A stretch of 64,000 bases of DNA from Lepidodermella squamata (taxonomy: Eukaryota; Animalia; Gastrotricha): contig JBLDXI010000032.1 in assembly GCA_047495785.1 (NCBI GenBank), forward strand, positions 1,922,001 to 1,986,000, given 5' to 3'. The notes below the pieces were generated by a model. It made no database searches and was not told the DNA's origin. It saw only the letters and a program-made list of their open reading frames with translations. Shown here piece by piece: positions 14,701 to 45,433 of this stretch; the stretch's first letter is position 1; each line of letters begins with the position of its first letter. A program made the translations under genes and the position numbers.

Positions 14701-17700
14701 CGTTGTCAAAGAAACAATTTTGCTGGCTTACAGTGATATTTGCACGATATCTGTTAGTCAGAGCGATGCCTTTCCGCCAATAAGTTCAGCAAGAATGAGT
14801 GTTTTCGGGCGGTTTCTTCATTTCTCGCTGTTTACAGAAACTGACGTTCGTCCTTTGATAAAGGTCTGCTGCGATCAGTATGATAATGTAGTTCAAAACG
14901 CTCAGGCCAGTTTCGAAGACCTGAGGTATAATCGGAATCTCCTGTTAATTCCTCTGCCTGAATTGTCATGGCTTGAGGTTTGCTATCCGACTTATCGAAC
15001 TGTAGTCAAAAGCCCCGCATATCCTCATTTTCTATGTGGCTTTTTCGAGATGATCCATTTTGTCAATGAATCGGCAAAAGATATACTGAATATGTCGCGG
15101 CTACCGATTCAGACTCGCTCGGCTGTAACCATCGCTATGCTTTTCAAAATGCTCCAGCAACCTCGATTCGTGCCAGACAAATGCGATAAACTATTCCCGT
15201 CTTTGCAGGAAAATTGCTCTTACCCTGCGAGTGAATTTTCTACCAGTCAGTCGCTGAGTGAAAATATTGAGGCAATTTTGAAATCCCGGCTCTTCCCGGC
15301 GTTGTTAGATTACCTTGTTGTGGGCGAGGCTTTGTTTAAAGAATCACCTGATTTTAAGGGTGGATTTCTGGGTCCTTTGGCTAGCGAAGATGAACTGAAG
15401 AAACCATCGCCGAAAACTCTCATATACCGTGATTACCGAGCGTGTATGACGGCTTATGAAAATCATTTGAGAGGCATTGGAGATGCTAAGGATTCCACGC
15501 CCAAGCTTTCAACCTGGGACCGCGTTTCTCTGCCGGACCCTCCTTGCCGCCTGATGTTGCTCTCCGAAGCCGAGAAAGGTTTTTACACTAGCAATGAGAG
15601 TTGCCCCAAATTGATTTGCGCTCAACATGCTTATCACTTGATCCAATTTTCCGAGGCGATATCTTCAACAACTTCTAAAAATCGGGCTCTTGACAGCAAG
15701 GTGGGAGCTAGTGCAAAAAATTATGGAAATTTCCACGATTCTCTTGTAACATCGTATTGCTTCAATGCCGAAGAAAGCAGTAGTTTTGGGGAAATTGCAA
15801 CAGCTCATCCTCTCCTCCGCCATTTGATCGTTTCGAATTCGATTGGAAAGCCTGTTGCATCGGATATTATTTCGTTCAAATACCTCCGCGATCTAATCCT
15901 GAGTGGCAACAAACTGACATCTCTACCCGATTGTCTAGAGAATCTTTCATCTGTGTTGAGAAATCTAGACATTTCGTTGAACAATTTCGCAGAAATACCC
16001 AAAGTCATTTATAAATTAACCTCTTTGGAATCTCTCCTGGCTAATTTTTTGAATATAAAATATCTTGACGAGTCAATTGGTCAACTTGAAAACTTGCGAC
16101 TTCTATCACTGAGGCATAATTCTTTGAAAAATCTACCTGCAGCCTTCTCGAACTTGGCGAATCTCGAGGTATTGGACCTAAGTGCGCTGCCCTTACTCTG
16201 TACAACTATCAGTTTTGCTGATGAGATCGAGGCGTTCTTCTTACAGAATAATTTTCCTGATGAAATGAGTGAGTTGATCGAGGCTAAAACTTACAATAAG
16301 GAGGATATTGCCAAATTGAACCACGCGCTTATGTCGAAATTCGATCGATTTTCGGGCGAAGATTTGCCGCCACAGATATTTAAGTTGACCAGATTGAAAG
16401 AACTTGGCCTGGCTTTTCAAGGTTTTCGTTCGATATCTGATGAAATCGGGAATTTGAAAGACCTCATGCGCTTGAATCTCCAGGGTTGCATTAAATTGGA
16501 AACAATTTCTCCCCAAATCGCGTTGACATCGCTGAAGCACCTAAAGATATCAGACTGCCCTGAACTTCGAACTCCGCCTGTTGAAATTCAAAAGCGAGGT
16601 TTCGACGCGACGTTCGCGTATTTTAGACGGCTGATTTTGGGCTCGGTAAAATGTCAACGAACTAAGCTAATGTTTGTCGGCTTGGGTGGTGCTGGGAAGA
16701 CCAGTTTGGTCGCGTCGCTTGTGAACGATAAATCAGTTGATTCTACATCTCAAAAAACTGCCCCAGCCGTTACAGATGGCATTGATATCGCTGAGTGGAA
16801 AGTTGAGGCACCAGGAAATCGAGGCGATATAGATTTTCGTCTATGGGACTTTGCCGGGCAAGTCGTTTACTACAACACTCATCAATTTTTTCTATCAAGT
16901 CGGGCTATCTACCTAATTGTTTGGAATATTCGATTGGGGCACGAATATGCTGGCCTCGATTTTTGGCTCAGTTCCATCGCTTGCCACGCGCCCAACGCGC
17001 CCGTTTTAGTGGTAGGGACCCACGCAGACCAGATTTCGCAAGACAGATCATTCCTACCAGAATCGAATTATCGGAAGCGATTTAATAATATTTCCGGATT
17101 TCATTACACGTCCTGTTTCGATAATCGAGGAATATCTGACCTGAGAAACCGTATTATCGACTTGGCCTTACAGCAAAAGCATATGGGTGAGTTGATCCCC
17201 CATATTTGGCTCAATTTTGAGCAAGCGCTGACTAAGGCGGGCGAGATAACTTCGACGACTCCTGAAGATAAAAACACCAAAATGTCAGTTGAAATGTTGG
17301 ACGATGTGGCTAGAATTGCCGAATCAAGTGGAATTTACGAGCGACAGGAGTTGATTGAAGCCCTTCAATTCCTATCCGATATCGGCTCGATTCAGTATTT
17401 CCGGACCGATTTTCTCAGCGACCGTGTCATCATAAATCCGCAATGGATCGTTGACGTTTTATCGTGCCTTGTTTCCGTTCAAAAAGGCTCGGAAATAGCA
17501 GACGGTTGGCTAAAACACGGCGATGTTTCGAAAATCTGGCAATCTTATCCGGCTGAACTTCACGAATGGCTGCTCAAATTGACACAGGCTTTCGACCTCA
17601 CGTTTCCATTAAGCGATGGAGCCACCTCAATTGTGCCTTGTTTATTGCCTGAAAACGCGCCTGATGACCTAAATTGGCCGGATTTGGAGGAGAATCTAAA

Positions 17701-20203: not shown

Positions 20204-23200
20204 ATGAGCAAGGGCCCTCCGAAAGCCCCCATCACAGGGTCAAATGCTGTAAGACGGACCATCGTCATGCGTCCCAAGGCTCGGCCTAATGAAAGCGAAG
20301 CGGAACGTCAGGAGCAAGGTAGGGTAAGATTAATGGGAACTAATCGAACTTGATTTCTCTATTCTTTATAGAGAGGATTGCAAACGAAAATGCTGAAGCA
20401 TTTGGCCGATTGGCTGAAATGGAGAAGCACTTTGATAAGAAAAGCCCAGAACCTGAACAGAAGACTGCCGGCAATAAAGATGACTTTCTAAGCGAGATAA
20501 GGCAGGGTGTCCGACTGCGGTCTGTTAATGAACCGCGGAAAGGTAAAATTGTCAACTTGATTCTAAATTTCAACCGAAAGGATTTTTTCTATCAGCTGTA
20601 AAGGCTGTTGATGTAACCGCTGCGATCAACGCCAATCCGAACGGGTTCGGTAGTGCTGCTGCTTATTCCGTTTGTTTATTTTCCTGGAGAATAAAGAAAT
20701 GCTTAATTTTGAAATTGTAGTCGGTATTTAAAACCGGCAAAGGCGAAGAAGTTGGTTCAATAAACTTCTGCGGCACGGTCAGATTGGTGGACACTCACTT
20801 CTACTACTGGCCTGACTTCAAAACAGTTACCACCCTAAATGTCTCGTACTGCCCTAATATCACTAATTTTGGCATACGGTTGATTAAAGACGCATTTCCC
20901 AAGCTAAAAAAGGTAATTTGATGACAATTAAAGTGGGTTTTTTTAAATTCTGATGAATTTTAGTTGGACGCTTCCGGATGTCGATTAGTTACCGAATCAG
21001 TCGTCGAAACTATTTCTGACCCTGCATTCACTGCGATTTTCAACTGGACTGGTATTCGTTACATCCCTCATAAAACACGGTTCCTGAGGTTGGAAACGAA
21101 GGGATGTCCGTTAATTATCAAGAAAGAAACCAGTGATCTCATTGCCAATTCACCTGATGGTATAATTTGTTGTTATCGTAAATTTGTATCTGAAGTTTCG
21201 TTTAGGAACTATCAAACAGAAGTCTCTAGGAGAAAAATCTGCGGCGGCTTCTGAGTTTACCCAACTGACAGCCATGTTAAGTGAATATTCTTTCGCTAAA
21301 ATTGTTGTCATCAAACCCGAGTCGCATGCAGCTAAATCAATCGCCATTGGCTGGCTGAAACCCGACGGCCCGGTGGAAGGTGTCTCACAGTGCGCCATTT
21401 CTTATCGCTCAGGGCCTTATCGTGTTATTGAATGTGATTTTCATGCGCCTCTTTCGCTTTTCCTTACAAACAATTGCATTGTGGTGATACCTTTTGACAA
21501 TGATTCGGCATCAGCTGTTTTGCAATCGGTCGAGAGTCGTTTGTCGTTCATTTCCTCGATTTTGACTGACTTTCAGGCCATAGCCGTTCCCGTTTCGCTC
21601 GAGAGTCCGGTTGAATTCGACGAAAGCGCCCTTTCCAGTGTGAAAATTGAGCAGGCTAAGGCATCTCTGCAAGGCACCACAGTGGAGGAATCTGAAAAGG
21701 AGAAACGGAAGCCCGAGGAAAATCCCAAGGCTGCTAGGCGTTATTACTATTTATCGAACCATTTAACGTTTTTGCCGAGTTTTGAATCAGCTAATGCTTG
21801 GTTGGTTGCGAAGAAGTCTTATTTAAACATTCCGCCTACAATTTTTCCATTGTTGGAATATTTGACAAAATCAAATATTTTCGATATGACTGAAAAACTA
21901 TTCATCACCTCGGAGGACTTGGGTTCAATCCTCCCTCAATCGCTGCTTGAAAGTTTGGCTGAGAAGTCAATAATGCCTAACTGGGCATCATTCGCGTCAG
22001 TTTTAGCTGAAACCGGAAATATTTGGAGTGAATACTCAAGCAGCCATGATGACCCAAATCTGAATAATTCGTTTTCCTACTTGACAAGTACGTCGAATTT
22101 GATGAAAATTGTCAAAATACTCACTACCACCGATGACATGGAAAGTAGCATAGAGAATGTGAAATGCCTTCCCCCAGGTACCAAGCTGTGTAGAATCGAT
22201 GCGATAGCCCATTTGTTAACTGGCGTTGCCGCGTCTGATAAAATTCGCTTGTTTTCTGAATTCGAACGCAGCGGAATCGGAATCTTCAATTTGAAGCAAA
22301 ACCTGGCATTATCAGCTGTTAACCTAGCTACCAGTCCCGCTATCTCTGACGGACATTTTTCGAGTAGTTCTGAGCTCAATCTGAACTCGGAGCATTATGA
22401 CATTGCTTGCCACCCAGATTTGGTCATTCACAATCTGTTATCTCGCTTATGCAAGGTGTTCAAACCCGTTTTGATTTGGAAGCACGGTGCGGTCTTTGAT
22501 GAATGCTCCTCCTTGATAATTAAAGTCAGGTCGAACCTTCCTGCGCCGAGCCATAACCAATATTCGGTTTTTGTCTCGATGTCGAGTGATATTCGTGGCT
22601 TTGGCGATTATCAAGTTCAGCGGCGCGAGTTGATTCAAGCGACCTGTGGGGTGGTCGCACAAATTTGTACCGCTGTCTTAGCGCCTTATTCTATCAATGA
22701 TTCGTACAAAAATCCTCCGAATTCGTATTTTCACCCATTGCTCCAGTTCGATCCCAAAACTGCAGTTATCCGAACTTTCTCGCGAGATTTTGATATGTCG
22801 CTACCTCGTTGCGCCCGTTGCTTATTGACCGCTGATATCATCGGTCTGCTGAGACAAGCGAATTGGCGATACACTGCTAATAGCTTCAACATGATCGGAA
22901 AGGCCAGCGAAGAGTTCGAGATTCCGATTCCAATCGACCTAACTGTACCGTCCAATTTCATTGAGATCTTAACCAATTCAGGATTCGAATTTTGCCGATT
23001 TCATGTCAGCAATGAACTAGGTCAGTGCGACGGTAATACCAGTATAAAAATGTACTTCAAAGAGAAACATATTTGCGCGATCGAAGAGCAAGAAATGATT
23101 CACGAGACTAGCGGCCACGGCAAGTTCAGTAAAACCAAACAATCTGCGGCGATCAATATCGAAAATCTGTATCCTGTCGTTCGATTCGATGCTCGTTTGA

Positions 23201-26200
23201 TTGATAGCAGAGTTGAAATAGTGGTGGCATTCAACGGCCGCGCTCTTATGACATCAATTATTAAGGTGGCTGATACAAATTTGTTATCGCATTTGATTAT
23301 GACAGTTAAGCCTGACTCGCATCAGAATCCTTTCTACTCATATGGGGCGAGGAAGTGGGACAGGCCACCACTCGCTAGCAAAGCCGAGTTATTCGCCGAT
23401 ATTAAGGTGGATATGATAGTGGAAATTATAATGCCGAATGGGGTGATACGCCCCGCTCTTGTATTCGATTACGACGAGAACAATGCTACAGTTGAAATGT
23501 CAGTACGGCTATCACACAGCAGATTTGTCATTGAAAAGCGTGATATGAATTCTCCGAATTTGTTGCCAGTCGGGTTTTGTAAGTACTTGATGTCAGACGA
23601 CTTAATTTTCAGCCGTTTCCGAACTTTAGTTTTAGAAAAGCTTAACGTTGAGCTCAGCGATAAGCTTGAAGACCCCTGGGACAATGATCTACATATTTAT
23701 ATGTTCAAGGCAAAGAAACTAGTGAAAGGCACAATGGTACAGTACCACTATAGTGACGATGTAAATGAACGGGAAAGAGAGCTAGCCGAAATAAGAAATG
23801 AGGCGGATGACCCTAAAAAAGTGTTAAAATACGATGGCGAGCGTTATCGTATTTTCGAAAGTGAAAGCATCTTTGATAACCCCATATCCTACCCGTTCAG
23901 CCTATTTGACCGCTCGCTATTGGTCGGATTTTCGCCTCTAGTCGTTTCTCAGCTGAAGAATCCATGCCCAGTAGCCCTATCGCGAAAATTGGCTAAAGCT
24001 CGAAGCGAACTTGACAGAACCACTCTGGACGCCGAATTGCAAAATTTCATCAGATTGAATGTTTTGACTCTGCCGCTTCGTCAATTGTTTGAGGTGCACA
24101 ACTGTTTATTTCCGTCGTTTTCACTCGTTTATCGCGATGATTCGTCGCCACTAACATCCCACGTGCTGTGTGGAGCTTCAATGATTCATTTTACAAATGA
24201 AATGTTGCCTCCATTTGGGGACATCAACACAAATTCAGTTATTCCACGAATAATAATCGCCGTTATTCTTCGAATGATTGACCAGCCTCACTTTATTCCA
24301 CCAAATGTTGAGAACATATTTCCGAATTTGAAAACCGACTCTTTTGCGAAGAAAGATATAGTCTCACCTAGAGTCTTCTTGGAGAGGACGTTTCGCGAGA
24401 CGGTTTTTCCGTTCCTATTAGATTTTTACCTATCTCATGTGAATGTGAAAAATGATTGGAAAAAAGTTGTCCTTCTGAATGACAGCTACGAACTGCACAT
24501 CAAGGAGAAGGATGACGGTAAAAATTGCCACATTGTGTTCGCGAAGTGGCTTGCATCCGAGTACGACCTCTACAACTCAAACACCGAATGTCCCTTGGTG
24601 ATGTGTGCAAAACATGCTTACATCAATTCTGAGTATGACAGACGGAAACGTACTCAACTGCTCGATGAAATGCATGAAAAACTAGAGCCAACACTTGATA
24701 TGATAGGGTCGAATTACGACGATTTTATCACCTGTCGCGCTTTGAAAGCCGATCCTGCCAAACTGGATTCAGTCGCACCCACTCTGTCCCCTTATCTACG
24801 GGGTTTTTATGTTACAAGCTGGAATGTGTTTCAACTAGAGCGATTGCATTTGAGGCAAGTACCTAAGTTCATCTTCTCATTTCGTCACTTGACCGAGCTC
24901 TTGTTGTGTTACAACAAATTGGAAGATTTACCTGACGAATTAGCCGCCTTGAAACCTACTCTTCATCTGTTGGACGTGTCTCATAATACTTTCACTGAAT
25001 TGCCAAAAGTTGTCTATCAACTCACTGAATTACGGTCTTTGAGAGCTGACTATTTGAATATTTCGCAGGTTGATGACAATTTAAGCGAGCTTAAATTTCT
25101 CCAACTGCTTTCTCTACGCTCGAATTGTCTGACAAATTTTCCGGCAGTGATCTCTAAACTGGAGTATCTTGAAGTGCTTGATCTATCAGGAACGCCCCTG
25201 TTTCCATCAAATGTTCGCTATATGGAAGACATTTACAGTTATACTTATAAATGGAACATGCGTAACGAATTCTTCCTAAAGGATATTTCAAACTACTTTG
25301 CGAATATTCCGTTCTCCAATACTGGAGTAATTGACGTCGAACCTTTCAATGCATATATCTTTGATAGCATACCCAGAATGAAGTTTGAAAAGGGTTTCCC
25401 GGCGGAAATATTCAGCTTGACCAGACTGAAAGAGTTGAGTCTCGCCTATCAACACGTTACCGACATACCTGATGAAGTAGGTCAATGCAATTTGTTGGCC
25501 AGATTTGATTTGATGGGCTGTTTAGCTCTAAAAAGAATTACACCGTCAATAGCTCAGGTTCCGCTGAAAATGCTAAATCTATCGAATTGCCCCATGCTGC
25601 AAACCCCGCCCGCAGAAATTCGTAAACGCGGTTTTGCGGCGACAACCGCGTATTTTCGCCGGCTTTCAATGGGCTCTACCAATGTCCAGCGGACTAAATT
25701 GATGTTCGTCGGGTTGGGCGGGGCGGGCAAAACCAGTCTAGTCAGTGCGTTAATTAACCAAAACGGGAAAATGACCCGCCCAAACGGGAGAGACACCGTT
25801 GTAACCGATGGAATCGATATCACCGATTGGGAATTAGACGCTGGAAACCGGTCGAAGGTTCAGTTCAAAATGTGGGATTTTGCGGGCCAGGTTGTTTACT
25901 ACAACACGCATCAGTTTTTCCTGTCGAATCGAGCCGTTTACCTGATTATGTGGAACATTCGATTGGGCCACGAACATGCCGGTATCGATTTTTGGCTGAG
26001 TTCGATCGCAGTTCATGCCCCACTGGCTTCGGTTATCGTTGTTGGAACTCATGCTGACCAAGTCCCAGAGGAGCGCTCGTTTCTACCCGAGGCGAGTTAC
26101 CGCGATCGTTTCTCTAATGTTTGTGGTTTCCATTACGTGAGTAGCCATACCGGTAAAGGAATCGCAGAACTTCGCGAGCATATTCGCCAGGTGGCGTTGA

Positions 26201-29028
26201 AGCAAAAGCACATGGGCGAAGCGATTCCCCAGGGTTGGCTTACTTTGGAGACAGATTTGACGTCGAAACGGAAAAACAAAAAAGACGAAGCCAACGAGTC
26301 TTCCATCTTAATGATTGATGAAGTGATGGAATTAGCAGATTCTGTCGGAATTTATGATGAGGACGAATTAGACCAGGCCTTGCAATTCTTCACAGATTTA
26401 GGGTCTATCCAGTATTTTAAAACGGACTTTTTACGCGATCGTGTCATCATCAACCCGCAATGGATCGTTGACGTTTTAGCTTGTCTGGTTTCGATCAACG
26501 ATAGTCCGATAGTTGATGGTAAGATGTATCATAAAGACCTGGCAAAAATATGGCAAAAATACCCGCTTTCACTCCATCCGTGGCTTCTTAAGTTAACTGA
26601 AGCGTTCGATTTGACTTACCCTCTTACAAATGAACCTGCATCTATCGTGGCGTGTATGTTGCCTGAAAACGCGCCGCCTGACCTAGCGTGGCCTGATTTG
26701 GAGGAAAACCCAGATTGGCGGCAAACTGAGCTAATTTTATCGTTTAAATACCTGCCAACTGGCCTTTTCAACCGTGCCCAGGTACGCATTTGCCAACTCT
26801 CAGACGCTAAAATGTGGCGGAAGGGTAGCATGCTGGTCAAAAACAAGCATATCGCTTTAATTGCTCAACCGGACGCTTCAACTGTCCACGTGAAGGTCAT
26901 TGGGCCGCGGCCGGATAACATCTCATTTTTGATACTCGAAGTGTTCGATAATTTGATAAACGAATCATTCAACGGCCTTCATTGCGAGTACAAGTTCGCA
27001 TGCCCAGAGTGCGTTAATGCAAGGGCTAGCCAAGTGTCCATGTTTGAAAGGTCGCGAATAAGACGCGCGACTGAACTTCACATTCCAACTATCCAATGCT
27101 TTCACTATTTCCATCAAATCCCGACCAGAGAATTGAGGCAGATGCTACCAGCTGAAAATGTCGGCGATTTCGACTATCAGCTGAGTCGAACTGTTCAGCA
27201 GTTATCAGGGATAAAGAATTCAGTCGCGAATGATGTTTTAATCATCGGTAGTTCTGCCGATAACACCGAAAATTCGCATGAATTTGTTGGAATCGACGAA
27301 ATAGCGAAAAATCTTTGTGAAAATTTGCCGGATTTGAAAATCAACTCAATTAATAACCCGGATTCGATGCAATTCGAGCAAATCAGTTTGTTGATTCGCT
27401 CATCGCGGGTTGTCGTCTGTTGCCTTTCTCCTAATTTTCTCCTCAGTGAACATTGCCAAGCAGCCCTTTTGAGTGCAAGAGAAACTCTGAGGAAGCCTCT
27501 TGTCATCGTTTTACTCCGAGATTTGGACATTCAAGCCAGCGATGCGTTAGCTTTCACAATCGGCGACCAGGTCTACGTTAAAGCCATTAATAGAGGCCGA
27601 TATAAGCCGCTTGATGTGGCTGAAATTGTCAAAATGCGGCTGAGGGAGGCGGAGCGGGTTTCATCGGCCGGTCGGGCCCGTCATCCGCCTATTTTCATCT
27701 CCTATTGCTGGCTTAATAGCAAAGACGCGATTGAACGAGGCTCGAAAGCGAAAGAAGGATCTGTTGGCGTAACAGACCCAAGGTACCTGAAACGTTATCT
27801 GGTCGAAAAGGGCTATGAATGTTGGATTGATATTGAACAGGTCGGTCGGAATGGGTTGTTTGAGGACATTGCGGTCGGCCTGCGTCATGCTCGTTGCGTG
27901 ATTGTTTGCGTCTCTGACGAGTACGTCGAGTCGAAAAATTGCTTACGTGAGTTTCGTTTTGCAACCTCAGCGTGTACTGTCCCGATTATTCTATGCGTTG
28001 TTGGCACTGGAATCGCCTGGAAGCAGTCCGAGGTTAACCTGGTTTTACCTCCCACAGCTCCTGTCATCCATTTTCAGTTCGATTCACCTGCTAATTACGA
28101 TAAGTTAGTCTCAGCTGTTGAGCAAATTCTGGGCAAAAAAGTGGATGAGGCTAAACAACCAGCTAACTTAGCTAGTCTAGGCCGAAATAAAACGATGGAG
28201 GAGATTAAAATGTCCCATGCGGACCAGGCTATTTCCAGCCGAGAAACCTTCACGGATGTTTACCGAGAAATTCGCGAGCTTGAACAGCGACGATTTCTGC
28301 GTCAAATCGCCTCGTTTTCCGAACAAACAACGTGCCCTCGGCTAGTTGTAATTGATGTCGACGAAACTAGCTCGCCTGTTCATAGCGAAGCTGATCCGTC
28401 ATTAGCATCGAAAATTTTCCGTTTTAGTAAGCTTTCATGGTGTTTGAAGTTTCTGTGTGAAAACGAGGATGGTTGGCATTATACCGATAATTCGTTGCCT
28501 ATCGACGCTGATAAGGTGGATGATTTGATTTCGAGGAGTGCGCCGTATTTGGGCCGAGTTTTTTCACTGATGAAACACTCCGATAACCCTCCGCGGCTCA
28601 TGTCAGCCAAGGACCCGGCATTGAGTGAGGTATACGAAACCGCACTGCAAGAAATCGAGAAAATGAAAAAGTTCGAGGAAAGTTTCGAGGCGGATTATCA
28701 TCACTTGGTTCAATTCGCTGTTAAAGTCAATGATCAAGCTACTCTTGGCGGCTTGCGGCTTTGTCAGTTAGCTGTTGGAAAAGAACTTTGGCTTTGCAGC
28801 GAGCATTCAGAAGCGATGAAATCGAAGCTGAAAGGGGTTTCGAGTGATGTTAAGCGCCGGAATAAGAATGCGGACGCGATGACCGGTATCGGCATGGGCG
28901 ACAGCTTCACTGTGAAACATCAGCCGATCAAAGTAGATGCACCCGGTAGACCATTTTCTTCATTGTCGACCAGTGGCAGAGCGCAGTCAGCTAAAGCAAA
29001 AACTAGTCGAGCATGTATTTTGCAATAA
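20204..29028 (+). CDS. Roco3: WH2-LRR-pseudoROC/COR-MBT-like-LRR-ROC-COR-TIR-TIR protein with CaaX (CILQ)
   Basis: ATG 20204 (MSKGPPKAP..) is followed by five short in-frame introns, the last at 21160-21205, and a 7.8-kb terminal exon (ORF 21184-29028) with intact ROC G1-G4 motifs, COR and two TIRs. AATAAA at 29091-29096. Confidence 0.9.
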
Positions 29029-35836: not shown

Positions 35837-35953
35837 TTGCAAGGGAATACGGTTTGACTTTTTCTCTTCTCGTCGCATAGATTCGCTGTTTTAGGTTCCT
35901 TTTTTTAATTTTGTTTTATTTCATGTTTATAAAATAGGGCTCTAAATCTTGAA

Positions 35954-38900
35954 ATGAGCAAGGGCCCTCCGAAGGCCCCTATCACTGGGTCAAATACTGT
36001 AAGACGGACCATCGTCATGCGTCCCAAGCCTCGACCTGATGAAAGCGAAGCGGAACGTCAGGATCAAGGTGGAATTTGATAAGTGGAAACTAATCGGACT
36101 TTATTTTCTATTTTTTTATAGAGAGGACTGCGAAAGAAAATACTGAAAAAGAAGCTGAAGCATTTGCTCAATTGGCTGCAATGGAGAAACACTTTGATAA
36201 GAAAAGCCCAGAACCTGAACAGAAGACTGCCGGCAATAAGGATGACTTCCTTAACGAGATAAGACAGGGCGTCCGACTGCGGCCTGCAAATGAACCACGG
36301 AAAGGTAGAATTGTCAAACTGATTCTAAATTTCAACCGAAAGGACTTTTTCAAACAGCTTTAAAGACTGCTGATGTAACCGCTGCAGTCAACGCCAGTCC
36401 GAACGCGTTCGCTACTGCTGCTGCTTATTCTGTTCGTTTTTGACTTTGAGATTACAAATATATTCTTATTTTCAAAATTTTAATTTCAGTCTTTATTTAA
36501 AACCGACAACGGCGAAGAGGTTGGTTCAATAACCTTCTGTGGCACGGTCAAGTTGGTGGACTCTCATTTCTACTACTGGCCTGACTTCAAAACAGTCACT
36601 ACCCTAAACATCTCCTATTGCCCTAATATCACTAACTTCGGAATACGGCTGATCAAAGAGGCATTTCCCAAGCTAAAAAAGGTAACATGATCACAATTAA
36701 GGCGGATTGTTTCATTTTCGATTAATTATAGTTAGACGCTTCCGGGTGTAGATTGGTTACCGAATCAGTTCTCGAAGCTATTTCTGACCCTGCACTCACT
36801 GCCATTTTGAGCTGGACCGGAATTCGTTACGTCCCTCATAAAGCACGTTTTCTGAGGCTTGACATCAGGGGCTGTCCGTTAATCATAAAAAAAGAAGCGG
36901 CTGATCTCATTGCCAACTCCTTCGATGGTAAAATTTGATGACGTATGCGGCATTTTTTTTAACTTAACAACCAGAAAATTTCCTTATTTCGGCGAATCTT
37001 TCAATCTGTAGCACTGATTTCAGGATTTCAGGATTTCAGGAGGAGCAAAAAAAAATTCTTGATTTGAGGAATCTTTCGGCAAACTTCACATTAAAAAAGC
37101 ATATGGGAATCGTGCGATATCGTCAGACGCGCGCATCGCAAAGTTGCCTTTTTTATCCAAGGAGCCCTATTATTTTTGTCCGAAATTCGTCGCTACTTTT
37201 ATTCTGGCTGAAAAATAAAGAGCTCTCAGTGCTGGAATTTTAGTTTTGTGCTCATTCTCTTACATAGAAGCTCAAAAAATCGCTTAAATTCCGAAATGGC
37301 GCAATTTTGATCCACAGTGAAAATCGCCTGAAAATCTAACATCGCGCACTAGATCGACGACAGCTCCAGTTAGGAGGGTTGAATTGAAGCTTATTTACTC
37401 TTATATGCCTTCGAGAAAAACTCAGTAATAAGAAATTCATTGCACGATTGCAATCCAAGCTTTTAACAATTGTAATTGACTCCCTGGTCCGTTTCCAACC
37501 ATTTTACATGCAGTAAAATCCTGCAATCCGGGCTGCAGATTGATGTCAGTTTTGTCGAAAGATTCGCCGTAATAAGCAAATTGTTGCTTTCAAAGTTTGA
37601 AAAATCATGCTGCATACGTTACTATCATGTATTTTAATCTGAAAATTCGTGTAGGAACCATCGAACGGAAATCTCCAGGAGAAGCATCTGCGGCGGCGTC
37701 ATCTACCCAACTTGAAGCCCTGTCAAGTGAATATTCGTTCACTAAAATTGTTGTCATCAAACCCGTCTCGCATGCAGCTAAATCAATCGCCATTAGCTGG
37801 CTGAAACCCGACGGCCCGATAGAAGGTGTTCCACAATGCGCCATTTCGTATCGCTCAGGGCCTTATCGTGTTATTGAATGCGATTTTCACGCGCCTCTAT
37901 CGCTTTTCCTTACCAACAATTGCATTGTGGTGATACCTTTTGACAACGATTCGGCATCAGCTGTTTTACAATCAGTCGAGAGTCGTTTTTCGTTCATTTC
38001 CTCGATTTTGACTGATTTTGAGGCCATAGCTGTGCCTGCTTCGCTCGAAGGTCCAGTTGAATTTGACGAAAGTATGCTTTCCGCTCTTAAAGCTGAGCAG
38101 GCTAAGGCATCTCTGCAAGGCACCTCAGTTGAGGAATCTGAAAGGGAGAAACGGATGCCCGAGGAAAATCCCAAAGCTGCAAGGCGTTATTACTATTTAT
38201 CGAACCATCTAACGTTTTTGTCGAGTTTTGAAGCAGCTAATGCTTGGTTGGTTGCGAAAAAGTCGTATTTAAATATTCCGCCTACAATTTTTCCTTTGTT
38301 GGAATATTTGAAAAAATCAAATATTTTCAATATGACTGAAAAACTATTCATCACCTCAGAGGACTTGGGTTCAATCCTCCCTCAATCGCTGCTTGAAAGT
38401 TTGGCTGAGAAGTCAATAATGCCTAACTGGGCATCATTCGCGTCAGTTATAGCTGAAACCGGAAATATTTGGAGTGAATACTCAAGCAGCCATGATGACC
38501 CAAATCTGAATAATTCATTTTCCTACCTGACAAATACGTCGAATCTGATGAAAATTGTCAAAATACTCACGACCACCGATGACGTGGAAAGTAGCAGTGA
38601 GAATGTGAAATGCCTTCCCTCAGGTACAAAACTGTGTAGAATCGATGCAATCGCCCATTTGTTAACTGGCGTTGCTGAGTCTGATAGAATTCGCCTATTT
38701 TCTGAATTCGAACGCAGCGGAATCGGAATCTTTAATTTGAAGCAGAACATGGCATTATCAGCTGTGAACCTAGCCAGTAGTCCTGCTATTTCTGTTGGGC
38801 ATTTCTCAAGCAGTTCTGAACTGAAACTTAGCTCGGAGTATGGCGAAATTGTTTGCCATCCAGATTTGGTTGTTCAAAATCTGATATCTCGCCTATGCAA

Positions 38901-41900
38901 GGTGTTCAGACCCATTTCGATTTGGAAGCATGGGGCTGTATTCGATGAATGCTCCTCCTTAATAATTAAAGTCAGCTCGAATCTTTCTGGCCCAAGTCGC
39001 AAACAGTATTCGGTTTTTGTCTCGATGGCAAGTGATTCTCCTGACTTTGGGGACAAGGATAATCAAGCTCAACGGCGCGACGTCATTCAAGCATCGTGTG
39101 GGGTTGTCGCACAAATTTGCACCGCTGTTCTAGCGCCTTTCTCCATCAACGATTTGTACAAAAATCCTCCGAATTCGTATTTTCACCCATTGCTCCAGTT
39201 CGATCCCAAAACTGCAGTTATCCGAACTTTCTCGCGAGATTTTGATATGTCGCTACCTCGTTGCGCCCGTTGCTCATTGACCGCTGATATCATCGGTCTG
39301 CTGAGACAAGCGAATTGGCGATACACTGCAAATAGCTTCAACATGATCGGAAAGGCCAGTGAAGAGTTCGAGATTCCGATTACACTTGACCTGACTGTGC
39401 CGTCAAATTTCATTGAGATCTTAACGAATTCAGAATTCGAATTTTGCCGATTTTACGTCAGCAATGAAGTTGGTCAGTGTGACAGTAATACTAGCATAAA
39501 AATGTACTTCAAAGAGAGGAATATTTGCGTAATCGAAGAGGAAGAAATTGTCCACGAATCAAACGGCCACGGTACATTCAGTACGTGCAAGCAATCCGCG
39601 ATGATCAATATCGCAAATCTGTATCCTGTCGTTCGATTCGATGCTCGATTGGTAGATAACAGCGTTGAAATTGCAGTGGCAGTTAACGGCCGCGTAGTGT
39701 TGAAATCTATCGTTAAGGTGGCTGATATCAACTTATTATCGCATTTGATTATGACAGTTAAGCCTGACTCGCATCAGAACCCATTCTACTCATATGTGGC
39801 GAGGAAGTGGGATAGACCACCGCTTGCTAGCAAAGCCGAGCTATTCGCCGATATTAAGGTGGATATGATATTGGAAATTATTATGCCGAGTGGAGTGATT
39901 TGTCCGGCTCTTGTAATCAATTACGATGAGAGCAATGCTACAGTCGAGATGTCAGTACGGTTGTCGGACGTTGAAATTGTCATCGAAACGCGTGAAATAA
40001 AATCTCCGACTTTGTTGCCTGTCGGGTTTTGTAAGTACCTACTGTCAGACGACGTAATTCTCAATCGATTCCGAACGTTGTTCCTGGAAAGGTTTAGCGT
40101 AGAGCTCAGCGATAAGCTCGAAGACCCTTGGGACAATGATGAGCCAAGTCTCTATTTATTCAAGGTAAAAAACATAGGGAAAGGCCCCTCAAGTAAAGAG
40201 GAAGCCGAAATGAGGAAAGATGCGGCGGATGCTAAAAAAGTTATAAAATACAATGCCGGGCGTTACCGTGTTTTCTATACAAGTAGCAAATTCGATAACC
40301 CCGTGCGATACCCTTTCAGCCGATTTGACAGTTCGCTGTTGGTCGGATTTTCGCCTGCTGTTGCTTCACAGCTAAAGAACCCATGCCCAGTAGTCCTACC
40401 GCGAAAGCTGGCAAAAGCTCGACGTGAACTTGACAGGCCTACTCTCGACAACGAATTGCAAACATTTATCAGAGCGAATGTTTTGACTCTGCCGCTTTGT
40501 CAGTCGTTTAGCGTGCAGGACTGCTTTTTTCCTTCGTTTTCACTCGTTCATGGTAAAGAGGAGGCGCCATTGACAAACCACGTGTTGTGTGGAGCATCTC
40601 TGATTCATTTCACAAATGAAACTTTGCCTCAATCCGTAATTACCAAGGGTGCATTTATGCCCCGAACATTCATCGCCACCATTCTTCGAATGATTGACCA
40701 GCCTCATTTCATTCCAGCGAATTTTGAGAACATATTCCCCAATGTGAACACGGACTCTTTTGCGAAGAAATATGTAGTTTCTCCAAGAGTTTTCTTGGAG
40801 ACAACCTTCCGCGAGACGGTTTTTCCGTTTCTATTAGATTTTTACTTATCTCATGCGGATGCTAAACAAAATTGGAAGAAGGCCACTCTGTTGACTGAAA
40901 GCTACGAAATTCACCTCAAGGATAAGGGTGAAGTTAACAATTGTCAGATTGTTTTCGCGAAGTGGCTTGCATCCGAGTACAATCTCTACAACTTAAACAG
41001 CGAATGTCCCTTGGTGATGTGTGCAAAACATGCTTACGTCAATTCTGAGTATGACAGGCGAAAACGAACTCAACTCCGCGATAAAATCCATGATAAACTA
41101 GCGCCAACACTCGATATGATCGGGTCGAATTACGACGATTTTATTACCTGTCAGGCTTTGGTTGATGCCAAACAGATCCGTTCCGATTCAGTTGTGGCAA
41201 CTAACTCACCTTATATTCGACATTTGCACGTTGGAAACTGGGATTTGCCGGAAGTGCTGCCGTTTATTCTCTCATTTCGTCATTTGACCGAGCTCCTGTT
41301 GTGTTACAACCGCTTGAATGATTTGCCTGACGACTTGGCCGCCTTGAAACCAACTCTTCATCTGTTGGACGTGTCTCAAAATGCTTTCACTGAATTGCCA
41401 AAAGTTGTCTATCAACTCACGGAATTGCGGTCCTTGAGGGCTGACTATTTGAATATTTCACATGTCGATGACAATTTAAGCGAGCTTAAATTTCTTCAAC
41501 TACTTTCTCTACGATCGAATTGTCTGACAACTTTTCCGGCAGTGATCTCTAAACTGAAGCATCTTGAAGTGATTGATCTATCAGGAACGCCCCTGTTTCC
41601 TTCGTATGCTAGCCATGCGGACTACATCTACGGTTATGTTAGAAAATGGAACATGACTATTCTATTCTCTCATATTTCATCCTACATCCAGGCGAACAGG
41701 GCGGATAAAGGGCGGCGAACAGGAAGATATTGATGTCGAATCATTCAATGCATATATCTTTGATAGCATACCTAGAATGAAGTTTGAAAAGGGCTTCCCG
41801 GCGGAAATATTCGGCCTGACCAGACTGAAAGAGTTGAGTCTCGCCTATCAGCATGTAACCGACATACCCGATGAGGTAGGTCAATGCAAATTCTTGGCAA

Positions 41901-44900
41901 AATTCGATTTAATGGGCTGTTTGGCTCTAAAAAGAATTTCGCCTTTAATAGCTAAGACCCCGGTGGAGATGTTGAATCTTTCTAATTGCCCCTTGCTGCA
42001 AACCCCCCCTGCGGAAATTCGAAAACGCGGTTTGGCTGCAACAACCGCGTATTTTCGTAGGCTTTCAATGGGCTCTACTAATGTCCAGCGAACAAAACTG
42101 ATGTTCGTTGGATTGGGCGGGGCGGGCAAAACAAGTCTAGTGAGTGCGTTGATCAATCAAAACGGAAAAACAGCCCGCCCGAACGGGAAAGACACCGTTG
42201 TAACCGATGGCATCGATATCACTGATTGGGAACTGGACGCGGGAAACGGGTCGAAGGTTCAGTTCAAAATGTGGGATTTTGCGGGCCAGGTTGTTTACTA
42301 CAATACGCATCAGTTTTTTCTGTCAAATCGCGCTGTTTACCTGATTATGTGGAACATTCGATTAGGCCACGAACATGCAGGTATCGATTTTTGGCTGAGT
42401 TCGATTGCAGTTCATGCCCCACTGGCTTCGGTTATCGTTGTTGGAACTCATGCTGACCAAGTCCCAGAGGAGCGGTCGTTTCTACCAGAGACGAGTTACC
42501 GCGATCGTTTCTCTAATGTTTGTGGTTTCCATTACGTAAGTAGCCATACCGGTAGGGGAATCGCAGAACTTCGCGAGCATATTCGTCAGGTGGCGTTGAA
42601 GCAAAAGTACATGGGCGAAGCGATTCCCCAGGGTTGGCTTACTTTGGAGACGAATTTGACGTCAAAAAATGGAAAACGGAAAAACAAAAAAGAAGACCTG
42701 ACCGACTCGTCCATCCTAATGTTGGATGAGGTGATTGAAATAGCAGATTCTGTCGGAATTTACGAGGAGGACGAATTAGACCAGGCCTTGCAATTCTTCA
42801 CTGATTTAGGGTCTATCCAGTATTTTAAGTCGGATTTTTTACGCGACCGTGTCATCATCAACCCGCAATGGATCGTTGACGTTTTAGCTTGTTTAGTTTC
42901 GATCAACGACAGCCCGATAGTTGATGGGAAAATGTCCCATAAAGACCTGGCAAAATTATGGGAAAAATACCCGATTTCGCTTCATCCATGGCTCCTGAAG
43001 TTAACTGAGGCGTTCGATTTGACTTACCCTCTTAAAAATGAACCTGCATCTATCGTGGCGTGTATGTTGCCAGAAAACGCGCCACCCGACCTAGCGTGGC
43101 CTGATTTGGAGGAAAACCCAGATTGGCGGCAAACTGAGCTAATTTTATCGTTTAAATACCTGCCAACTGGACTATTCAACCGCGCCCAGGTACGCATTTG
43201 CCAGCTTTCGGACGCTAAAATGTGGCGAAAGGGTAGTATGCTGGTCAAAAACAAACATAGCGCTTTAATTTCACAACCAGACGCTTCGACTGTCCATGTG
43301 AAGGTCATTGGGCCGCGGCCGGATAACATCTCATTTTTGATACTCGAAGTTTTCGATAATTTGATAAACGAGTCGTTCAACGGCCTTCATTGCGAGTACA
43401 AGTTCGCATGCCCAGAGTGCGTTAATGCAAGGGCTAGCCAAGTGTCCATGTTTGAAAGGTTGCGAATAAGACGCGCGACGGAACTTCACATTCCAACTAT
43501 GCAATGTTTCCATAATTTCCACCAAATCCCGACCAGAGAATTAAGGCAGATGCTGCCGGCTGAAACTGTCGGCGATTTCGACTATCAGCTAAGTCGAACT
43601 GTTCAGCAGTTGTCAGGGATAAAGAATTCAGTCGCGAATGATGTTTTAATCATCGGTACATTTGCCGATAACACCGAAAATTCGCATGAATTTGTTGGAA
43701 TCGACGAAATAGCGAAAAATCTTTGTGAAAATTTGCCGGATTTGAAAATCAACTCAATTAATAACCCAGATTCGATGCAATTTGAGCAAATCAGTTTGTT
43801 GATTCGTTCATCGCGGGTTGTCGTCTGTTGCCTTTCTCCTAATTTTCTACTCAGTGAACATTGCCAAGCAGCTCTTTTGAGTGCAAGAGAAACTCTGAGG
43901 AAGCCTCTGGTCATCGTTTTAATCCGAGATTTGGACATTCAAGCCAGCGATGCGTTAGCTTTCACAATCGGCGATCAGGTCTACATTAAAGCCATTAATA
44001 GAGGCCGATATAAGTCGTTGGATGTGGCCGAAACGGTCAAAATGCGGCTGAGGGAGGCGGAGCGGGTTTCATCGGCCGGTCGAGCCCGTCATCCGCCGAT
44101 TTTCATCTCCTATTGCTGGCTCAATAGCAAAGACGCAATTGAACGAGGCTCGAAAGCGAAAGAAGGATCAGTTGGCGTGACAGACCCTAGGTACCTGAAA
44201 CGTTATCTAGTCGAAAAGGGCTATGAATGCTGGATTGATATCGAACAGGTCGGTCGGAATGGGTTGTTTGAGGACATTGCGGTCGGCCTGCGTCATGCTC
44301 GTTGCGTGATTGTTTGCGTCTCTGACGAGTACGTCGAGTCGAAAAATTGCTTACGTGAGTTCCGTTTTGCAACCTCCGCGTGTACTGTTCCAATTATTCT
44401 ATGCATTGTTGGCACCGGAATTGACTGGAAGCAGTCCGAGGTATACCTGGTTTTACCTCCTACAGCCCCTGTCATAAATTTCCAGGTCGATTCACCTGCT
44501 AATTACGATAAGCTGGTTTCAGCTATCGAGAAAAGTTTCGGCAAAAAAGACGAGGAAACTAAACAAACAGCCAATTTAGCTAGCATTGGCCGAATGAAAA
44601 CGATAGAGGAGATTAAAATGTCCCATGCGAACCAGGCTATTTCTAGCCAAGAAATGTCCACGGATGTTTACCGAGAAATTCGTGAGCTTGAACAGCGGCG
44701 ATTTCTGCGTCAAATCGCCTCGTTTTCCGAACAAACAACGTGCCCTCGGCTTGTTGTAATTGATGTCGACGAAAACAGCCCGCCTAATACCGAAAGTGAT
44801 TCGACATCCGAGTCTAAAATTTTCCGTTTCAGTAAACTTTCGTGGTGTTTGAAGTTTCTGTGTGAAAACGAGGATGGTTGGCATTATGCCGATAATTTGT

Positions 44901-45433
44901 TGCCTATCGACGCTGATAAGGTGGATGATTTGATTTCGAGGAGTGCGCCGTATTTAGGCCGAGTTTTTTCGCTAATGAAACACTCCGATAACCCTCCGCG
45001 GCTCATGTCAGCCAAAGACCCGGCATTGAGTGAGGTATACGAAACAGCCCTGCAAGAAATCGAGAAAATGATCAAGTTCGAGGAAAGTTTTGAGGCAGAT
45101 TATCGTCACTTAGTTCAAATCGCTATTGAACTCGATAGTGAAACTTCTTTTGGCGGCTTACGGCTTTGTCAGTTAGCTGTTGGTAAAGAACTTTGGCTTT
45201 GTCGCGAGCATTCAGAAGCGATAAAATCGAAGCTGAAAGGGGTTTCGAGTGATGTTAAGCGCCGGAATAAGAATGCGGACGCGATGACCGGCATCGGCAT
45301 AGGCGACAGCTTCACTGTGAAACATCAGCCCATCAAAGTAGATGCTCCCGGTAGACCATTTTCTTCAATATCGACCAGTGGCAGAGCGCAGTCAGCTAAA
45401 TTAAAAACTAGTCGAGCATGTATTTTGCAATAA
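35954..45433 (+). pseudogene. Roco4: paralog of Roco3/5 with a +1 frameshift in the LRR island (possible pseudogene or assembly error); ends CILQ
   Basis: Same exon structure as Roco3 from ATG 35954. ORF 37597-41733 (frame 1) and ORF 41777-45433 (frame 2) are collinear with Roco3/5. The break sits at a micro-duplicated GGCGAACAGG (41691-41700, 41714-41723). Confidence 0.8.
36941..37619. mobile_element. MITE (~680 bp) inside the Roco4 intron 36928-37654
   Basis: ~60-bp imperfect TIRs (acgtatgcggcat..ttatttcggcgaatctttc / gaaagattcgccgtaataag..atgctgcatacgt). The homologous intron is only 46-47 nt in Roco3 (21160-21205) and Roco5 (54943-54989). Confidence 0.8.

What the first reader, a model, noticed from the sequence alone, without database searches (positions are those of the whole stretch)
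23392..23589. MBT-like methyl-lysine reader repeat integrated in Roco3-5 but not Roco1-2
Seen: IKVDMILEIIMPSGVICPALV....SPTLLPVGFCKY (Roco4 ~39844-40041, Roco5 ~57188-57385, variant in Roco3). No equivalent is evident in Roco1 or Roco2. Established: the MBT repeat consensus is FKVGMKLEA..ICPATV..SPDIFPVGWC and it is normally found in nuclear Polycomb-type readers. Inference: a single degenerate MBT in a prenylated protein behaves like the integrated sensor/decoy domains of plant NLRs; the aromatic-cage residues look poorly retained.
Basis: partly seen in the sequence, partly recalled or inferred. Interest (0 to 1): 0.75.

Follow-up and report, generated by a model that had tools for sequence, protein, structure and literature searches.

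The report
Worn-out MBT repeat in Roco-TIR genes
Three of eight neighbouring giant immune-type switch genes in this invertebrate keep a worn-down copy of a methyl-lysine-reading (MBT) domain that the gene family has carried since early animals. Three sister genes keep it intact and two have deleted it, so it is an inherited relic and not a new acquisition.

Summary
The 66-residue segment sits at 23392-23589 (Roco3), 39844-40041 (Roco4) and 57188-57385 (Roco5), and nowhere else in the 121-Mb genome.

It is a true but degenerate MBT repeat.
- Three further paralogs just upstream of the window (RA, RB, RC) carry Pfam-significant MBT repeats in the same alignment slot.
- So do more than 20 MBT-LRR-Roc-COR-TIR-CaaX proteins from molluscs, annelids, amphioxus, a rotifer and Trichoplax.
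- A profile comparison gives 92.7% probability (E 4e-7; shuffled controls score far lower).
- A PDB-wide search with the cage-less profile returns only SCML2 MBT repeats.
- The AlphaFold model is a five-strand Royal-family barrel.

All four cage positions (D/F/W/Y, intact in 20 of 21 canonical relatives) are replaced in Roco3-5 and in their metagenomic relative P0001. The core still evolves under purifying selection (dN/dS 0.11-0.25).

The "integration in Roco3-5" reading is wrong in direction. The MBT is ancestral, Roco1-2 deleted it, and the cage was lost before Roco3-5 duplicated.

MBT in Roco proteins has already been drawn for Trichoplax and Aplysia, so novelty is modest. The scan holds no earlier follow-up of this stretch.

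The parts
21184..29028 (+). Roco3 open reading frame: N-terminal region, degenerate MBT, LRR, Roc, COR-A, COR-B, two TIR hits, C-terminal CILQ
23317..23391 (+). Arm-like stretch before the core, ending in ...PPLASKAELF; the most conserved part among Roco3-5 (dN/dS 0.02-0.09)
   Evidence: the likeness to an MBT arm is inference from sequence
23392..23589 (+). Roco3 degenerate MBT core (the finding): five predicted strands, with the cage positions read as gap/M/R/S
23590..23706 (+). Post-core linker that keeps the L-x-x-P...W...Y motif found after the canonical Roco MBT cores
   Evidence: nearly invariant columns L117, P120, W121, Y128
23707..23871 (+). Lineage-specific variable insert, absent from canonical relatives; it evolves about neutrally (dN/dS 0.8-1.4) and is 12 aa shorter in Roco4
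23872..23934 (+). Second half of the trailing arm (..YPFSLFDRSLLVGFS), which aligns with ..VPLHLFGKSHLLGF of the canonical paralogs
39844..40041 (+). Roco4 degenerate MBT core
57188..57385 (+). Roco5 degenerate MBT core
6261..6512 (+). Roco1: short linker occupying the slot where the MBT module is missing
14723..14935 (+). Roco2: short linker occupying the slot where the MBT module is missing
37597..45433 (+). Roco4 gene in two reading frames; a net 19-nt length difference from Roco5 near 41690-41730 shifts the frame
54962..62794 (+). Roco5 open reading frame, with the same architecture as Roco3

Best explanation
The segment is a single, degenerate MBT repeat inherited by descent. The window's five genes, plus three more just upstream, belong to an old animal family built as N-terminal region, MBT, LRR, Roc GTPase, COR, TIR and a CaaX farnesylation box. 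In most members, including paralogs RA, RB and RC, the MBT keeps the Asp/Phe/Trp/Tyr cage that binds mono- or di-methyl-lysine in L3MBTL1. All four cage residues were replaced on the branch leading to Roco3-5 and their metagenomic relative P0001, so this copy almost certainly no longer reads methyl-lysine. The residues that shape the barrel are kept (the Glu of the G-M-x-L-E motif, the P-A of strand 2, and S-x-x-L-x-P-V-G-F-x-K-Y), and the core is under purifying selection. It is therefore most likely retained as a structural or docking module within the large N-terminal regulatory region of the Roco-TIR switch. Cage-less repeats of multi-MBT proteins are thought to serve in a similar way as scaffolds. 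Roco1 and Roco2 removed the whole module, which shows that it is dispensable for the Roc-COR-TIR core. Shown here: homology, position, cage loss, sequence constraint and ancestral presence. Inferred: loss of methyl-lysine binding and the scaffold or docking role.
For: RA, RB and RC give Pfam MBT hits of 47.4, 107 (two repeats) and 51.8 bits against a cut-off of 22, in the same alignment slot as the finding. Many homologs (38 of 83 hits in the table carry PF02820 or a hit with my MBT profile) place the MBT 706-786 aa before the P-loop, against 756-768 aa in Roco3 and Roco5. hhalign of {Roco3-5 + P0001} against the canonical repeats gives probability 92.7%, E 4.3e-7 over 102 columns; the reversed control scores 14.4 and 30 shuffles reach at most 20.1, against 43.8 for the real alignment. 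The P0001 segment matches Roco3-5 at E 9e-8 to 6e-6 and the canonical profile at E 3e-4. The cage-less profile searched against 177,635 PDB sequences returns only SCML2 MBT repeats, at E 0.014-0.021. The AF2 model has mean pLDDT 75.6 (79-89 in the core) and five strands. Its compact Foldseek matches are MBT repeats at 2.2-3.0 A over 64-65 residues and 23-25% identity, and VIA-align gives Z 5.8-6.2 for MBT and Tudor domains. The cage table shows 20 of 21 canonical repeats with D-F-W-Y/F, Roco3-5 with gap/M/R/S or V, and P0001 with G/V/G/E; the mapping onto the ligand-binding repeat 2 of L3MBTL1 comes. dN/dS is 0.11-0.25 in the core and 0.02-0.09 in the preceding arm, against 0.8-1.4 in the neighbouring insert. 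In the tree without MBT columns, the clade of eight paralogs plus P0001 has support 100/100 and (P0001, Roco3-5) has 100/99.
Against: Direct sequence evidence without intermediates is weak: Pfam scores fall below the cut-off, and hhalign of Roco3-5 alone against the canonical repeats gives only 43.9% probability. The confident AF2 model used an alignment containing canonical MBTs, so the fold is partly inherited from them; with only the three paralogs the model was unusable (pLDDT 36). Foldseek E-values are all above 1e-3 and the VIA Z-scores are middling for so small a domain. The dN/dS values rest on 66 codons and three recent paralogs, with signs of gene conversion between Roco4 and Roco5. 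No binding, expression or structural data exist. A new ligand specificity cannot be excluded.
Confidence: 0.65

Rival explanations
1. Neofunctionalised reader: the barrel was remodelled to bind a different ligand, such as an unmodified peptide, a lipid head group near the membrane anchor, or a pathogen protein. It would then act as a sensor or bait that controls the Roco-TIR switch, in the spirit of the first reader's decoy idea.
For: Purifying selection persists on the core after cage loss, and the cage-less state is retained across a species split (P0001 against Roco3-5). A fast-evolving insert lies directly beside it, with dN/dS about 1 or above. The family has an immune-type architecture with TIR domains.
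Against: The residues conserved between P0001 and Roco3-5 are mainly the fold-determining MBT motifs and do not outline a new pocket. The domain is ancestral, not a recent integration. No ligand is known.
Confidence: 0.2
2. Functionless relic: the segment is a decaying remnant on its way to the deletion already seen in Roco1-2, and its apparent conservation only reflects the young age of the Roco3-5 duplicates.
For: All cage residues are gone. Two paralogs deleted the module and still keep long ORF pieces. Roco4 carries a frameshift. Expression could not be shown.
Against: dN/dS in the core (0.11-0.25) and the preceding arm (0.02-0.09) is as low as or lower than in the rest of the N-terminal region (0.20-0.24), while the adjacent insert drifts at about 1. 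The structural motifs survive in the much more distant P0001, which is 27-28% identical over the module.
Confidence: 0.12
3. Chance resemblance, or a different small barrel (Tudor or SH3-like) unrelated to MBT.
For: Pfam scores are below the cut-off. Tudor domains tie with MBT in VIA-align Z-scores. The atlas feature search gave only weak Tudor/Agenet leads, all under 0.9.
Against: MBT is the only family returned by both Pfam and the PDB sequence searches. Canonical MBTs occupy the same slot in eight-paralog and cross-phylum alignments. Shuffle controls score far lower than the real alignment.
Confidence: 0.03

Closest known systems
MBT repeat (Pfam PF02820) of Polycomb-type readers such as L3MBTL1, SCML2/Scm and Sfmbt
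   Same: Five-strand barrel core. It shares the motif pattern hydrophobic-K-V-x-M-x-x-E, then I-x-P-A-x-V, then S-P-x-L-x-P-V-G-F/W-C, with the same spacing. MBT is the only Pfam and PDB sequence match.
   Different: A single repeat instead of 2-4. All four cage positions are replaced. Scores fall below Pfam's cut-off. It sits in a CaaX-ended Roco-TIR protein instead of a chromatin protein.
Invertebrate MBT-LRR-Roc-COR-TIR-CaaX proteins, e.g. Aplysia LOC101848126 (PMC9334734), Trichoplax ROC-COR proteins drawn with MBT (PMC4104024, Fig. 1) and a Branchiostoma protein annotated 'MFHAS1'
   Same: Homologous over 63-91% of their length. They share the domain order, the MBT-to-P-loop distance and a C-terminal S-x-A-C-x-x-M/Q box. 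Roco3-5 are members of this family.
   Different: Those proteins, and the window's neighbours RA-RC, keep an intact D-F-W-Y/F cage, whereas Roco3-5 do not. Roco3-5 also have a roughly 45-57 aa variable insert in the trailing arm.
Cage-less MBT repeats inside multi-repeat proteins, e.g. repeat 1 of SCML2
   Same: The best PDB match of the cage-less profile is SCML2 repeat 1, which reads L-D-G-S-D-N in place of the F-D-G-W stretch (alignment). That repeat likewise keeps the fold motifs without that part of the cage. That such repeats do not bind ligand and serve as scaffolds is from my own knowledge.
   Different: Those repeats sit beside a ligand-binding repeat in the same protein. Roco3-5 have no intact partner repeat.
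Integrated decoy or sensor domains of plant NLRs
   Same: An unusual extra domain inside a large NTPase-LRR-TIR immune-type protein, whose presence varies among tandem paralogs.
   Different: Here the domain is ancestral and conserved across animal phyla, not a recent lineage-specific integration. No pathogen target resembling it is known.

Membership tests
MBT repeat (PF02820) | Score above Pfam's gathering threshold of 22 bits | tested here: not met
   12.8-13.6 bits at E 0.08-0.15; MBT is the only family listed. Paralogs RA, RB and RC score 47-107 bits.
MBT repeat (PF02820) | Demonstrable homology to bona fide MBT repeats | tested here: met
   hhalign gives 92.7% probability, E 4.3e-7 over 102 columns, with low controls. 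The PDB-wide profile search returns only SCML2 MBT. Canonical MBTs occupy the same alignment slot in paralogs and in other phyla.
MBT repeat (PF02820) | Five-strand Royal-family beta-barrel core | tested here: met
   The AF2 model has core pLDDT 79-89 and strands at 34-38, 44-53, 58-64, 70-76 and 82-84. MBT chains superpose at 2.2-3.0 A over 64-65 residues, with VIA Z 5.8-6.2. Caveat: the alignment used for the model contained canonical MBTs.
MBT repeat (PF02820) | Methyl-lysine cage: Asp plus three aromatic residues (L3MBTL1 D355/F379/W382/Y386; numbering from my own knowledge) | tested here: not met
   Roco3 reads gap/M/R/S, Roco4 and Roco5 read gap/M/R/V, and P0001 reads G/V/G/E. 20 of 21 canonical Roco MBTs read D/F/W/Y or F.
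MBT repeat (PF02820) | Two or more interdigitated arm-plus-core repeats | tested here: inconclusive
   There is one core, with arm-like stretches before and after it. Most Roco relatives also have one core; RB and the amphioxus proteins have two.
MBT repeat (PF02820) | Binding of mono- or di-methyl-lysine | not testable with these tools
   Needs peptide arrays or calorimetry.
MBT-LRR-Roc-COR-TIR-CaaX family of invertebrates | Full-length homology and the same domain order, including the C-terminal CaaX box | tested here: met
   Pfam finds LRR, Roc, COR-A, COR-B and TIR in Roco3 and Roco5. Family hits reach E down to 0 with 46-91% coverage of paralog RA. The tree clade has 100/100 support. The ...SRAC-x-x-Q ending compares with ...S-Q/K-A-C-x-x-M in other phyla.
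Integrated decoy of an NLR-like receptor | Recent, lineage-specific insertion of a foreign domain into one receptor lineage | tested here: not met
   The MBT is present at the same site from Trichoplax to amphioxus and in sister paralogs. Its absence in Roco1-2 is a deletion.

The most novel reading that the evidence does not exclude
The old MBT-Roco-TIR family may be a membrane-anchored sensor that couples recognition of methylated lysines, on host or microbial proteins, to Roc GTPase switching and TIR signalling. On this reading the eight-gene array has split into cage-intact readers (RA-RC), cage-less copies that bind a new ligand or act as non-reading partners or regulators (Roco3-5), and MBT-free copies (Roco1-2). 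That would give a natural allelic series for dissecting the sensor.
Probability: 0.1. Interest if true: 0.75.

Novelty: new variant of a known kind. Interest (0 to 1): 0.38.

Why it matters
MBT repeats are textbook nuclear chromatin readers. Here the same domain, with an intact cage, is a conserved part of a farnesylation-box-bearing Roco-TIR family from placozoans to amphioxus, and nobody has tested what it reads there. This locus shows three states side by side: intact, cage-less but still constrained, and deleted. That tells us the module is not needed for the Roc-COR-TIR core, and that its fold is worth keeping even without the cage. It also provides ready-made natural controls for binding and signalling experiments. 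As a stand-alone discovery it is modest, because the architecture has already appeared in published domain diagrams and the proposed "integration" did not happen.

Tried and rejected
- Word-indexed protein searches with the segment region and with the whole N-terminal region of Roco3 found nothing. An exhaustive HMMER search of 1.84 billion representatives with the three-paralog profile also found nothing, so the cage-less version has no detectable close relatives there.
- A metagenome scan with the cage-less profile found no relative.
- A PDB search with the wider 277-aa profile gave only spurious helical-repeat hits.
- The atlas feature search gave only weak Tudor/Agenet leads, all below 0.9.
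- AF2 with the three paralogs alone was unusable, at pLDDT 36.
I left that row out, rebuilt the alignment as A4, and did not send that row to any other tool afterwards.
- Sequencing runs: the two listed runs hold only short contigs and none is on record as RNA, so expression could be neither shown nor excluded.
- Whether Roco1 and Roco2 lost the MBT once or twice stays open. They are never sisters in the bootstrap trees, but the AU test does not reject a Roco1+Roco2 clade (p 0.30).
- For genes with a frame break (RB, RC, Roco1, Roco4) only the unbroken first piece was used.

Full report
**What is in the window.** The + strand carries five tandem genes for very large proteins. Pfam finds LRR, Roc, COR-A, COR-B and two TIR matches in each. 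About 1,200 residues with no Pfam annotation precede these domains, and the proteins end in ...SRAC-x-x-Q. Roco1 and Roco4 are each split over two reading frames. The window is G000:C32:1922001-1986000 of a 121-Mb genome. A search with the N-terminal region found three more paralogs directly upstream, which I call RA, RB and RC, so the array has eight genes.

**Checking the observation.** The three coordinate pairs translate to the quoted peptides. Roco4 and Roco5 share 64 of 66 residues, and Roco3 shares 50-51 of 66 with them. Only these three copies exist in the genome. Roco1 and Roco2 are homologous to Roco3-5 along the N-terminal region at 25-27% identity. In this slot, however, they have only 84 and 71 residues between the flanking conserved blocks, against 247 in Roco3. 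A canonical Roco-MBT profile finds nothing in them even at E<=10 with filters off.

**Is it MBT?**
- Pfam alone is not enough. On the full proteins nothing appears at E<=1. On 101-aa pieces MBT is the only family listed, at 12.8-13.6 bits and E 0.08-0.15, below the 22-bit cut-off.
- The decisive evidence came from relatives. In the eight-paralog alignment, RA, RB and RC show textbook MBT sequence (G-M-R-L-E-A-V-D ... F-D-G-W ... F-D-Y-W ... L-F-P-C-G-F-M-E-Y) in exactly the columns of the finding. Pfam scores them at 47.4 bits, 107 bits (two repeats) and 51.8 bits.
- A full-length search with RA returned 56 Roco-type proteins at E <= 5e-58. Many carry PF02820. They come from scallops, abalone, Aplysia, Biomphalaria, Mytilus, Owenia, Dimorphilus, Branchiostoma, Rotaria and Trichoplax.
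- In these proteins the MBT lies 706-786 residues before the Roc P-loop. The figures are 732 in RA, 756 in RC, 768 in Roco3 and 756 in Roco5.
- The closest hit, P0001, lies on a metagenomic contig and is an intermediate. Its segment matches the canonical profile at E 3e-4 and Roco3-5 at E 9e-8 to 6e-6.
- Profile against profile, {Roco3-5 + P0001} versus the canonical repeats gives probability 92.7% and E 4.3e-7 over 102 columns spanning the whole core. Roco3-5 alone versus the canonical repeats gives 43.9% and P 2.4e-4.
- Controls: the reversed alignment scores 14.4 and 30 column shuffles reach at most 20.1, against 43.8 for the real alignment.
- Independently of any canonical Roco sequence, the four-sequence cage-less profile searched against all 177,635 distinct PDB sequences returns only three entries at E<=10. 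All three are SCML2 MBT repeats, at E 0.014-0.021, aligned over the full core.

**Fold.** With three paralogs as the only alignment, AlphaFold gave pLDDT 36, although it already predicted five strands in the segment. With 25 sequences (A4) the model has mean pLDDT 75.6, pTM 0.71 and 79-89 in the core. Its strands lie at residues 34-38, 44-53, 58-64, 70-76 and 82-84 of the 130-aa piece.
- Foldseek finds no match at E<=1e-3. The compact matches are overwhelmingly MBT repeats (L3MBTL1, L3MBTL3, SCML2, SCMH1, MBTD1), at 2.2-3.0 A over 64-65 columns and 23-25% identity. Tudor domains follow.
- The Foldseek-independent search gives Z 5.0-6.2 for Tudor, MBT, PWWP and chromo-type barrels, with MBT entries at 6.2, 6.1 and 5.8.
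- Caveat: the alignment contained canonical MBTs, so the model is not independent of the homology argument.

**Cage.** RA's repeat aligns best with repeat 2 of L3MBTL1 (53 bits, against 24 and 32 for repeats 1 and 3). It matches that repeat's L-E-A-V-D, F-D-x-W and Y-D-Y-W positions. From my own knowledge these are D355, F379, W382 and Y386, the methyl-lysine cage; PDB titles such as 'D355A point mutation' agree. At these four columns, 20 of 21 canonical Roco repeats read D-F-W-Y/F. Roco3 reads gap/M/R/S, Roco4 and Roco5 read gap/M/R/V, and P0001 reads G/V/G/E. What stays invariant across all sequences is the Glu of the L-E motif and the P-x-G of the last strand. Between P0001 and Roco3-5, D-I-K, P-A, S-x-x-L-x-P-V-G-F-x-K-Y-L and F-R are also kept. 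These are fold motifs and do not outline a pocket.

**Gain or loss.** I built a tree of the region upstream of the P-loop with the whole MBT slot removed (18 rows, 1,152 columns, careful search).
- The eight paralogs and P0001 form one clade, with support 100/100.
- Inside it, (P0001, (Roco3, (Roco4, Roco5))) has support 100/99 and (RA, (RB, RC)) has 100/99. Roco1 and Roco2 are unresolved.
- The outgroups are molluscs, annelids, amphioxus, Rotaria and Trichoplax, and all carry a canonical MBT.

The ancestor of the array therefore had a canonical MBT. The cage was lost once, before P0001 and Roco3-5 separated. Roco1 and Roco2 deleted the module. They are never sisters in the bootstrap trees, but the AU test does not reject a single Roco1+Roco2 clade (p 0.30), so one or two deletions remain possible. 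A quicker 33-row tree that included the MBT columns agrees.

**Constraint (Nei-Gojobori, Roco3-5 pairs).**

| Region | dN/dS |
|---|---|
| N-terminal region | 0.20-0.24 |
| Arm before the core | 0.02-0.09 |
| Core | 0.11-0.25 |
| Lineage-specific insert (residues 848-902) | 0.8-1.4 |
| Trailing arm | 0.12-0.33 |

So the cage-less core is not drifting. The sample is small. Between Roco4 and Roco5, dS drops from 0.43 to 0.12 in this part, which suggests gene conversion.

**Mechanism.**
- Shown: homology, position, ancestral presence, cage loss and purifying selection.
- Inferred: the module no longer reads methyl-lysine and is kept as a structural or docking element of the N-terminal regulatory region. 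An earlier agent (s1-368345) read the first ~550 residues of that region as a dead Roc-COR copy. I did not test that claim beyond finding that invertebrate relatives align over the N-terminus.
- In the cage-intact members, the MBT probably binds a methylated lysine or a similar ligand in the cytoplasm or at a membrane. The S-x-A-C-x-x-M/Q ending is conserved across phyla.
- What that ligand is remains unknown.

**What is already known.** MBT repeats in ROC-COR proteins were drawn for Trichoplax in a 2014 review (PMC4104024, Fig. 1 legend). They were also reported for Aplysia LOC101848126, described as a ROCO-containing TIR protein with 'an accessory Mbt repeat region' (PMC9334734). That protein is my hit P0020. 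A 2026 preprint on catalytic animal TIR domains lists Roc, COR and LRR among the domain abbreviations in one figure legend on tested TIR domains (10.64898/2026.04.20.719644). I found no functional study of the MBT in this family. The new points here are the cage-less but constrained variant and the three-state series within one array.

**Verdict.** The MBT assignment and the cage loss are supported. The 'integration' or decoy reading is not. This is a new variant of a known kind and of modest interest.

Noticed in passing
G000:C32:1881331-1907797 (L004, L006, L005), upstream of the window: Three more paralogs (RA, RB, RC) of the same Roco-TIR family carry cage-intact MBT repeats; RB has two. 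RB and RC are each split over two reading frames.
   Followed up: yes
window 41690-41730: Roco4 differs from Roco5 by a net 19-nt length difference in a variable stretch between LRRs. This shifts the reading frame, so Roco4 is either a pseudogene or carries an assembly indel. It does not look like an intron.
   Followed up: partly
window 8409-8447: The Roco1 reading frame breaks inside the Roc domain, just after the P-loop. About 16 profile positions are unaccounted for. Whether this is a frameshift or a very short intron was not resolved.
   Followed up: no
C-termini of all paralogs (e.g. window 29005-29028) and of hits P0003-P0032: A C-terminal box S-Q/K/R-A-C-x-x-M/Q is conserved from this genome to molluscs, annelids, amphioxus and a rotifer. 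The putative prenylation signal is therefore as old as the MBT-Roco-TIR architecture. RA ends differently (..RRTCKW).
   Followed up: partly
window 23707-23871, 40162-40290, 57503-57673: A lineage-specific insert of about 43-57 aa lies inside the arm after the MBT core. It evolves at dN/dS 0.8-1.4 and Roco4 has a 12-aa deletion there. It may be a variable surface loop.
   Followed up: partly
window ~39700-40050 against ~57050-57400: Synonymous divergence between Roco4 and Roco5 falls to 0.12 across the MBT region, against 0.43 in the N-terminal region. This suggests gene conversion between the two copies.
   Followed up: no
window 35875-36938 and 53882-54953: About 1.07 kb directly upstream of Roco4 and of Roco5 is 89% identical. 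The rest of the 8.5-9.5 kb spacers, which contain few ORFs, is unrelated. The shared stretch may be a promoter region.
   Followed up: no
window 245-2080: An ORF with an NWD1-like winged-helix hit and TPR repeats, another NLR-like gene type, sits next to the Roco array.
   Followed up: no
L009 (ENA metagenome contig, P0001): The closest relative outside this genome is a single uninterrupted 2,328-aa ORF on a 14-kb metagenomic contig. It carries the same cage-less MBT variant, so an environmental relative of this animal shares the degenerate state.
   Followed up: partly
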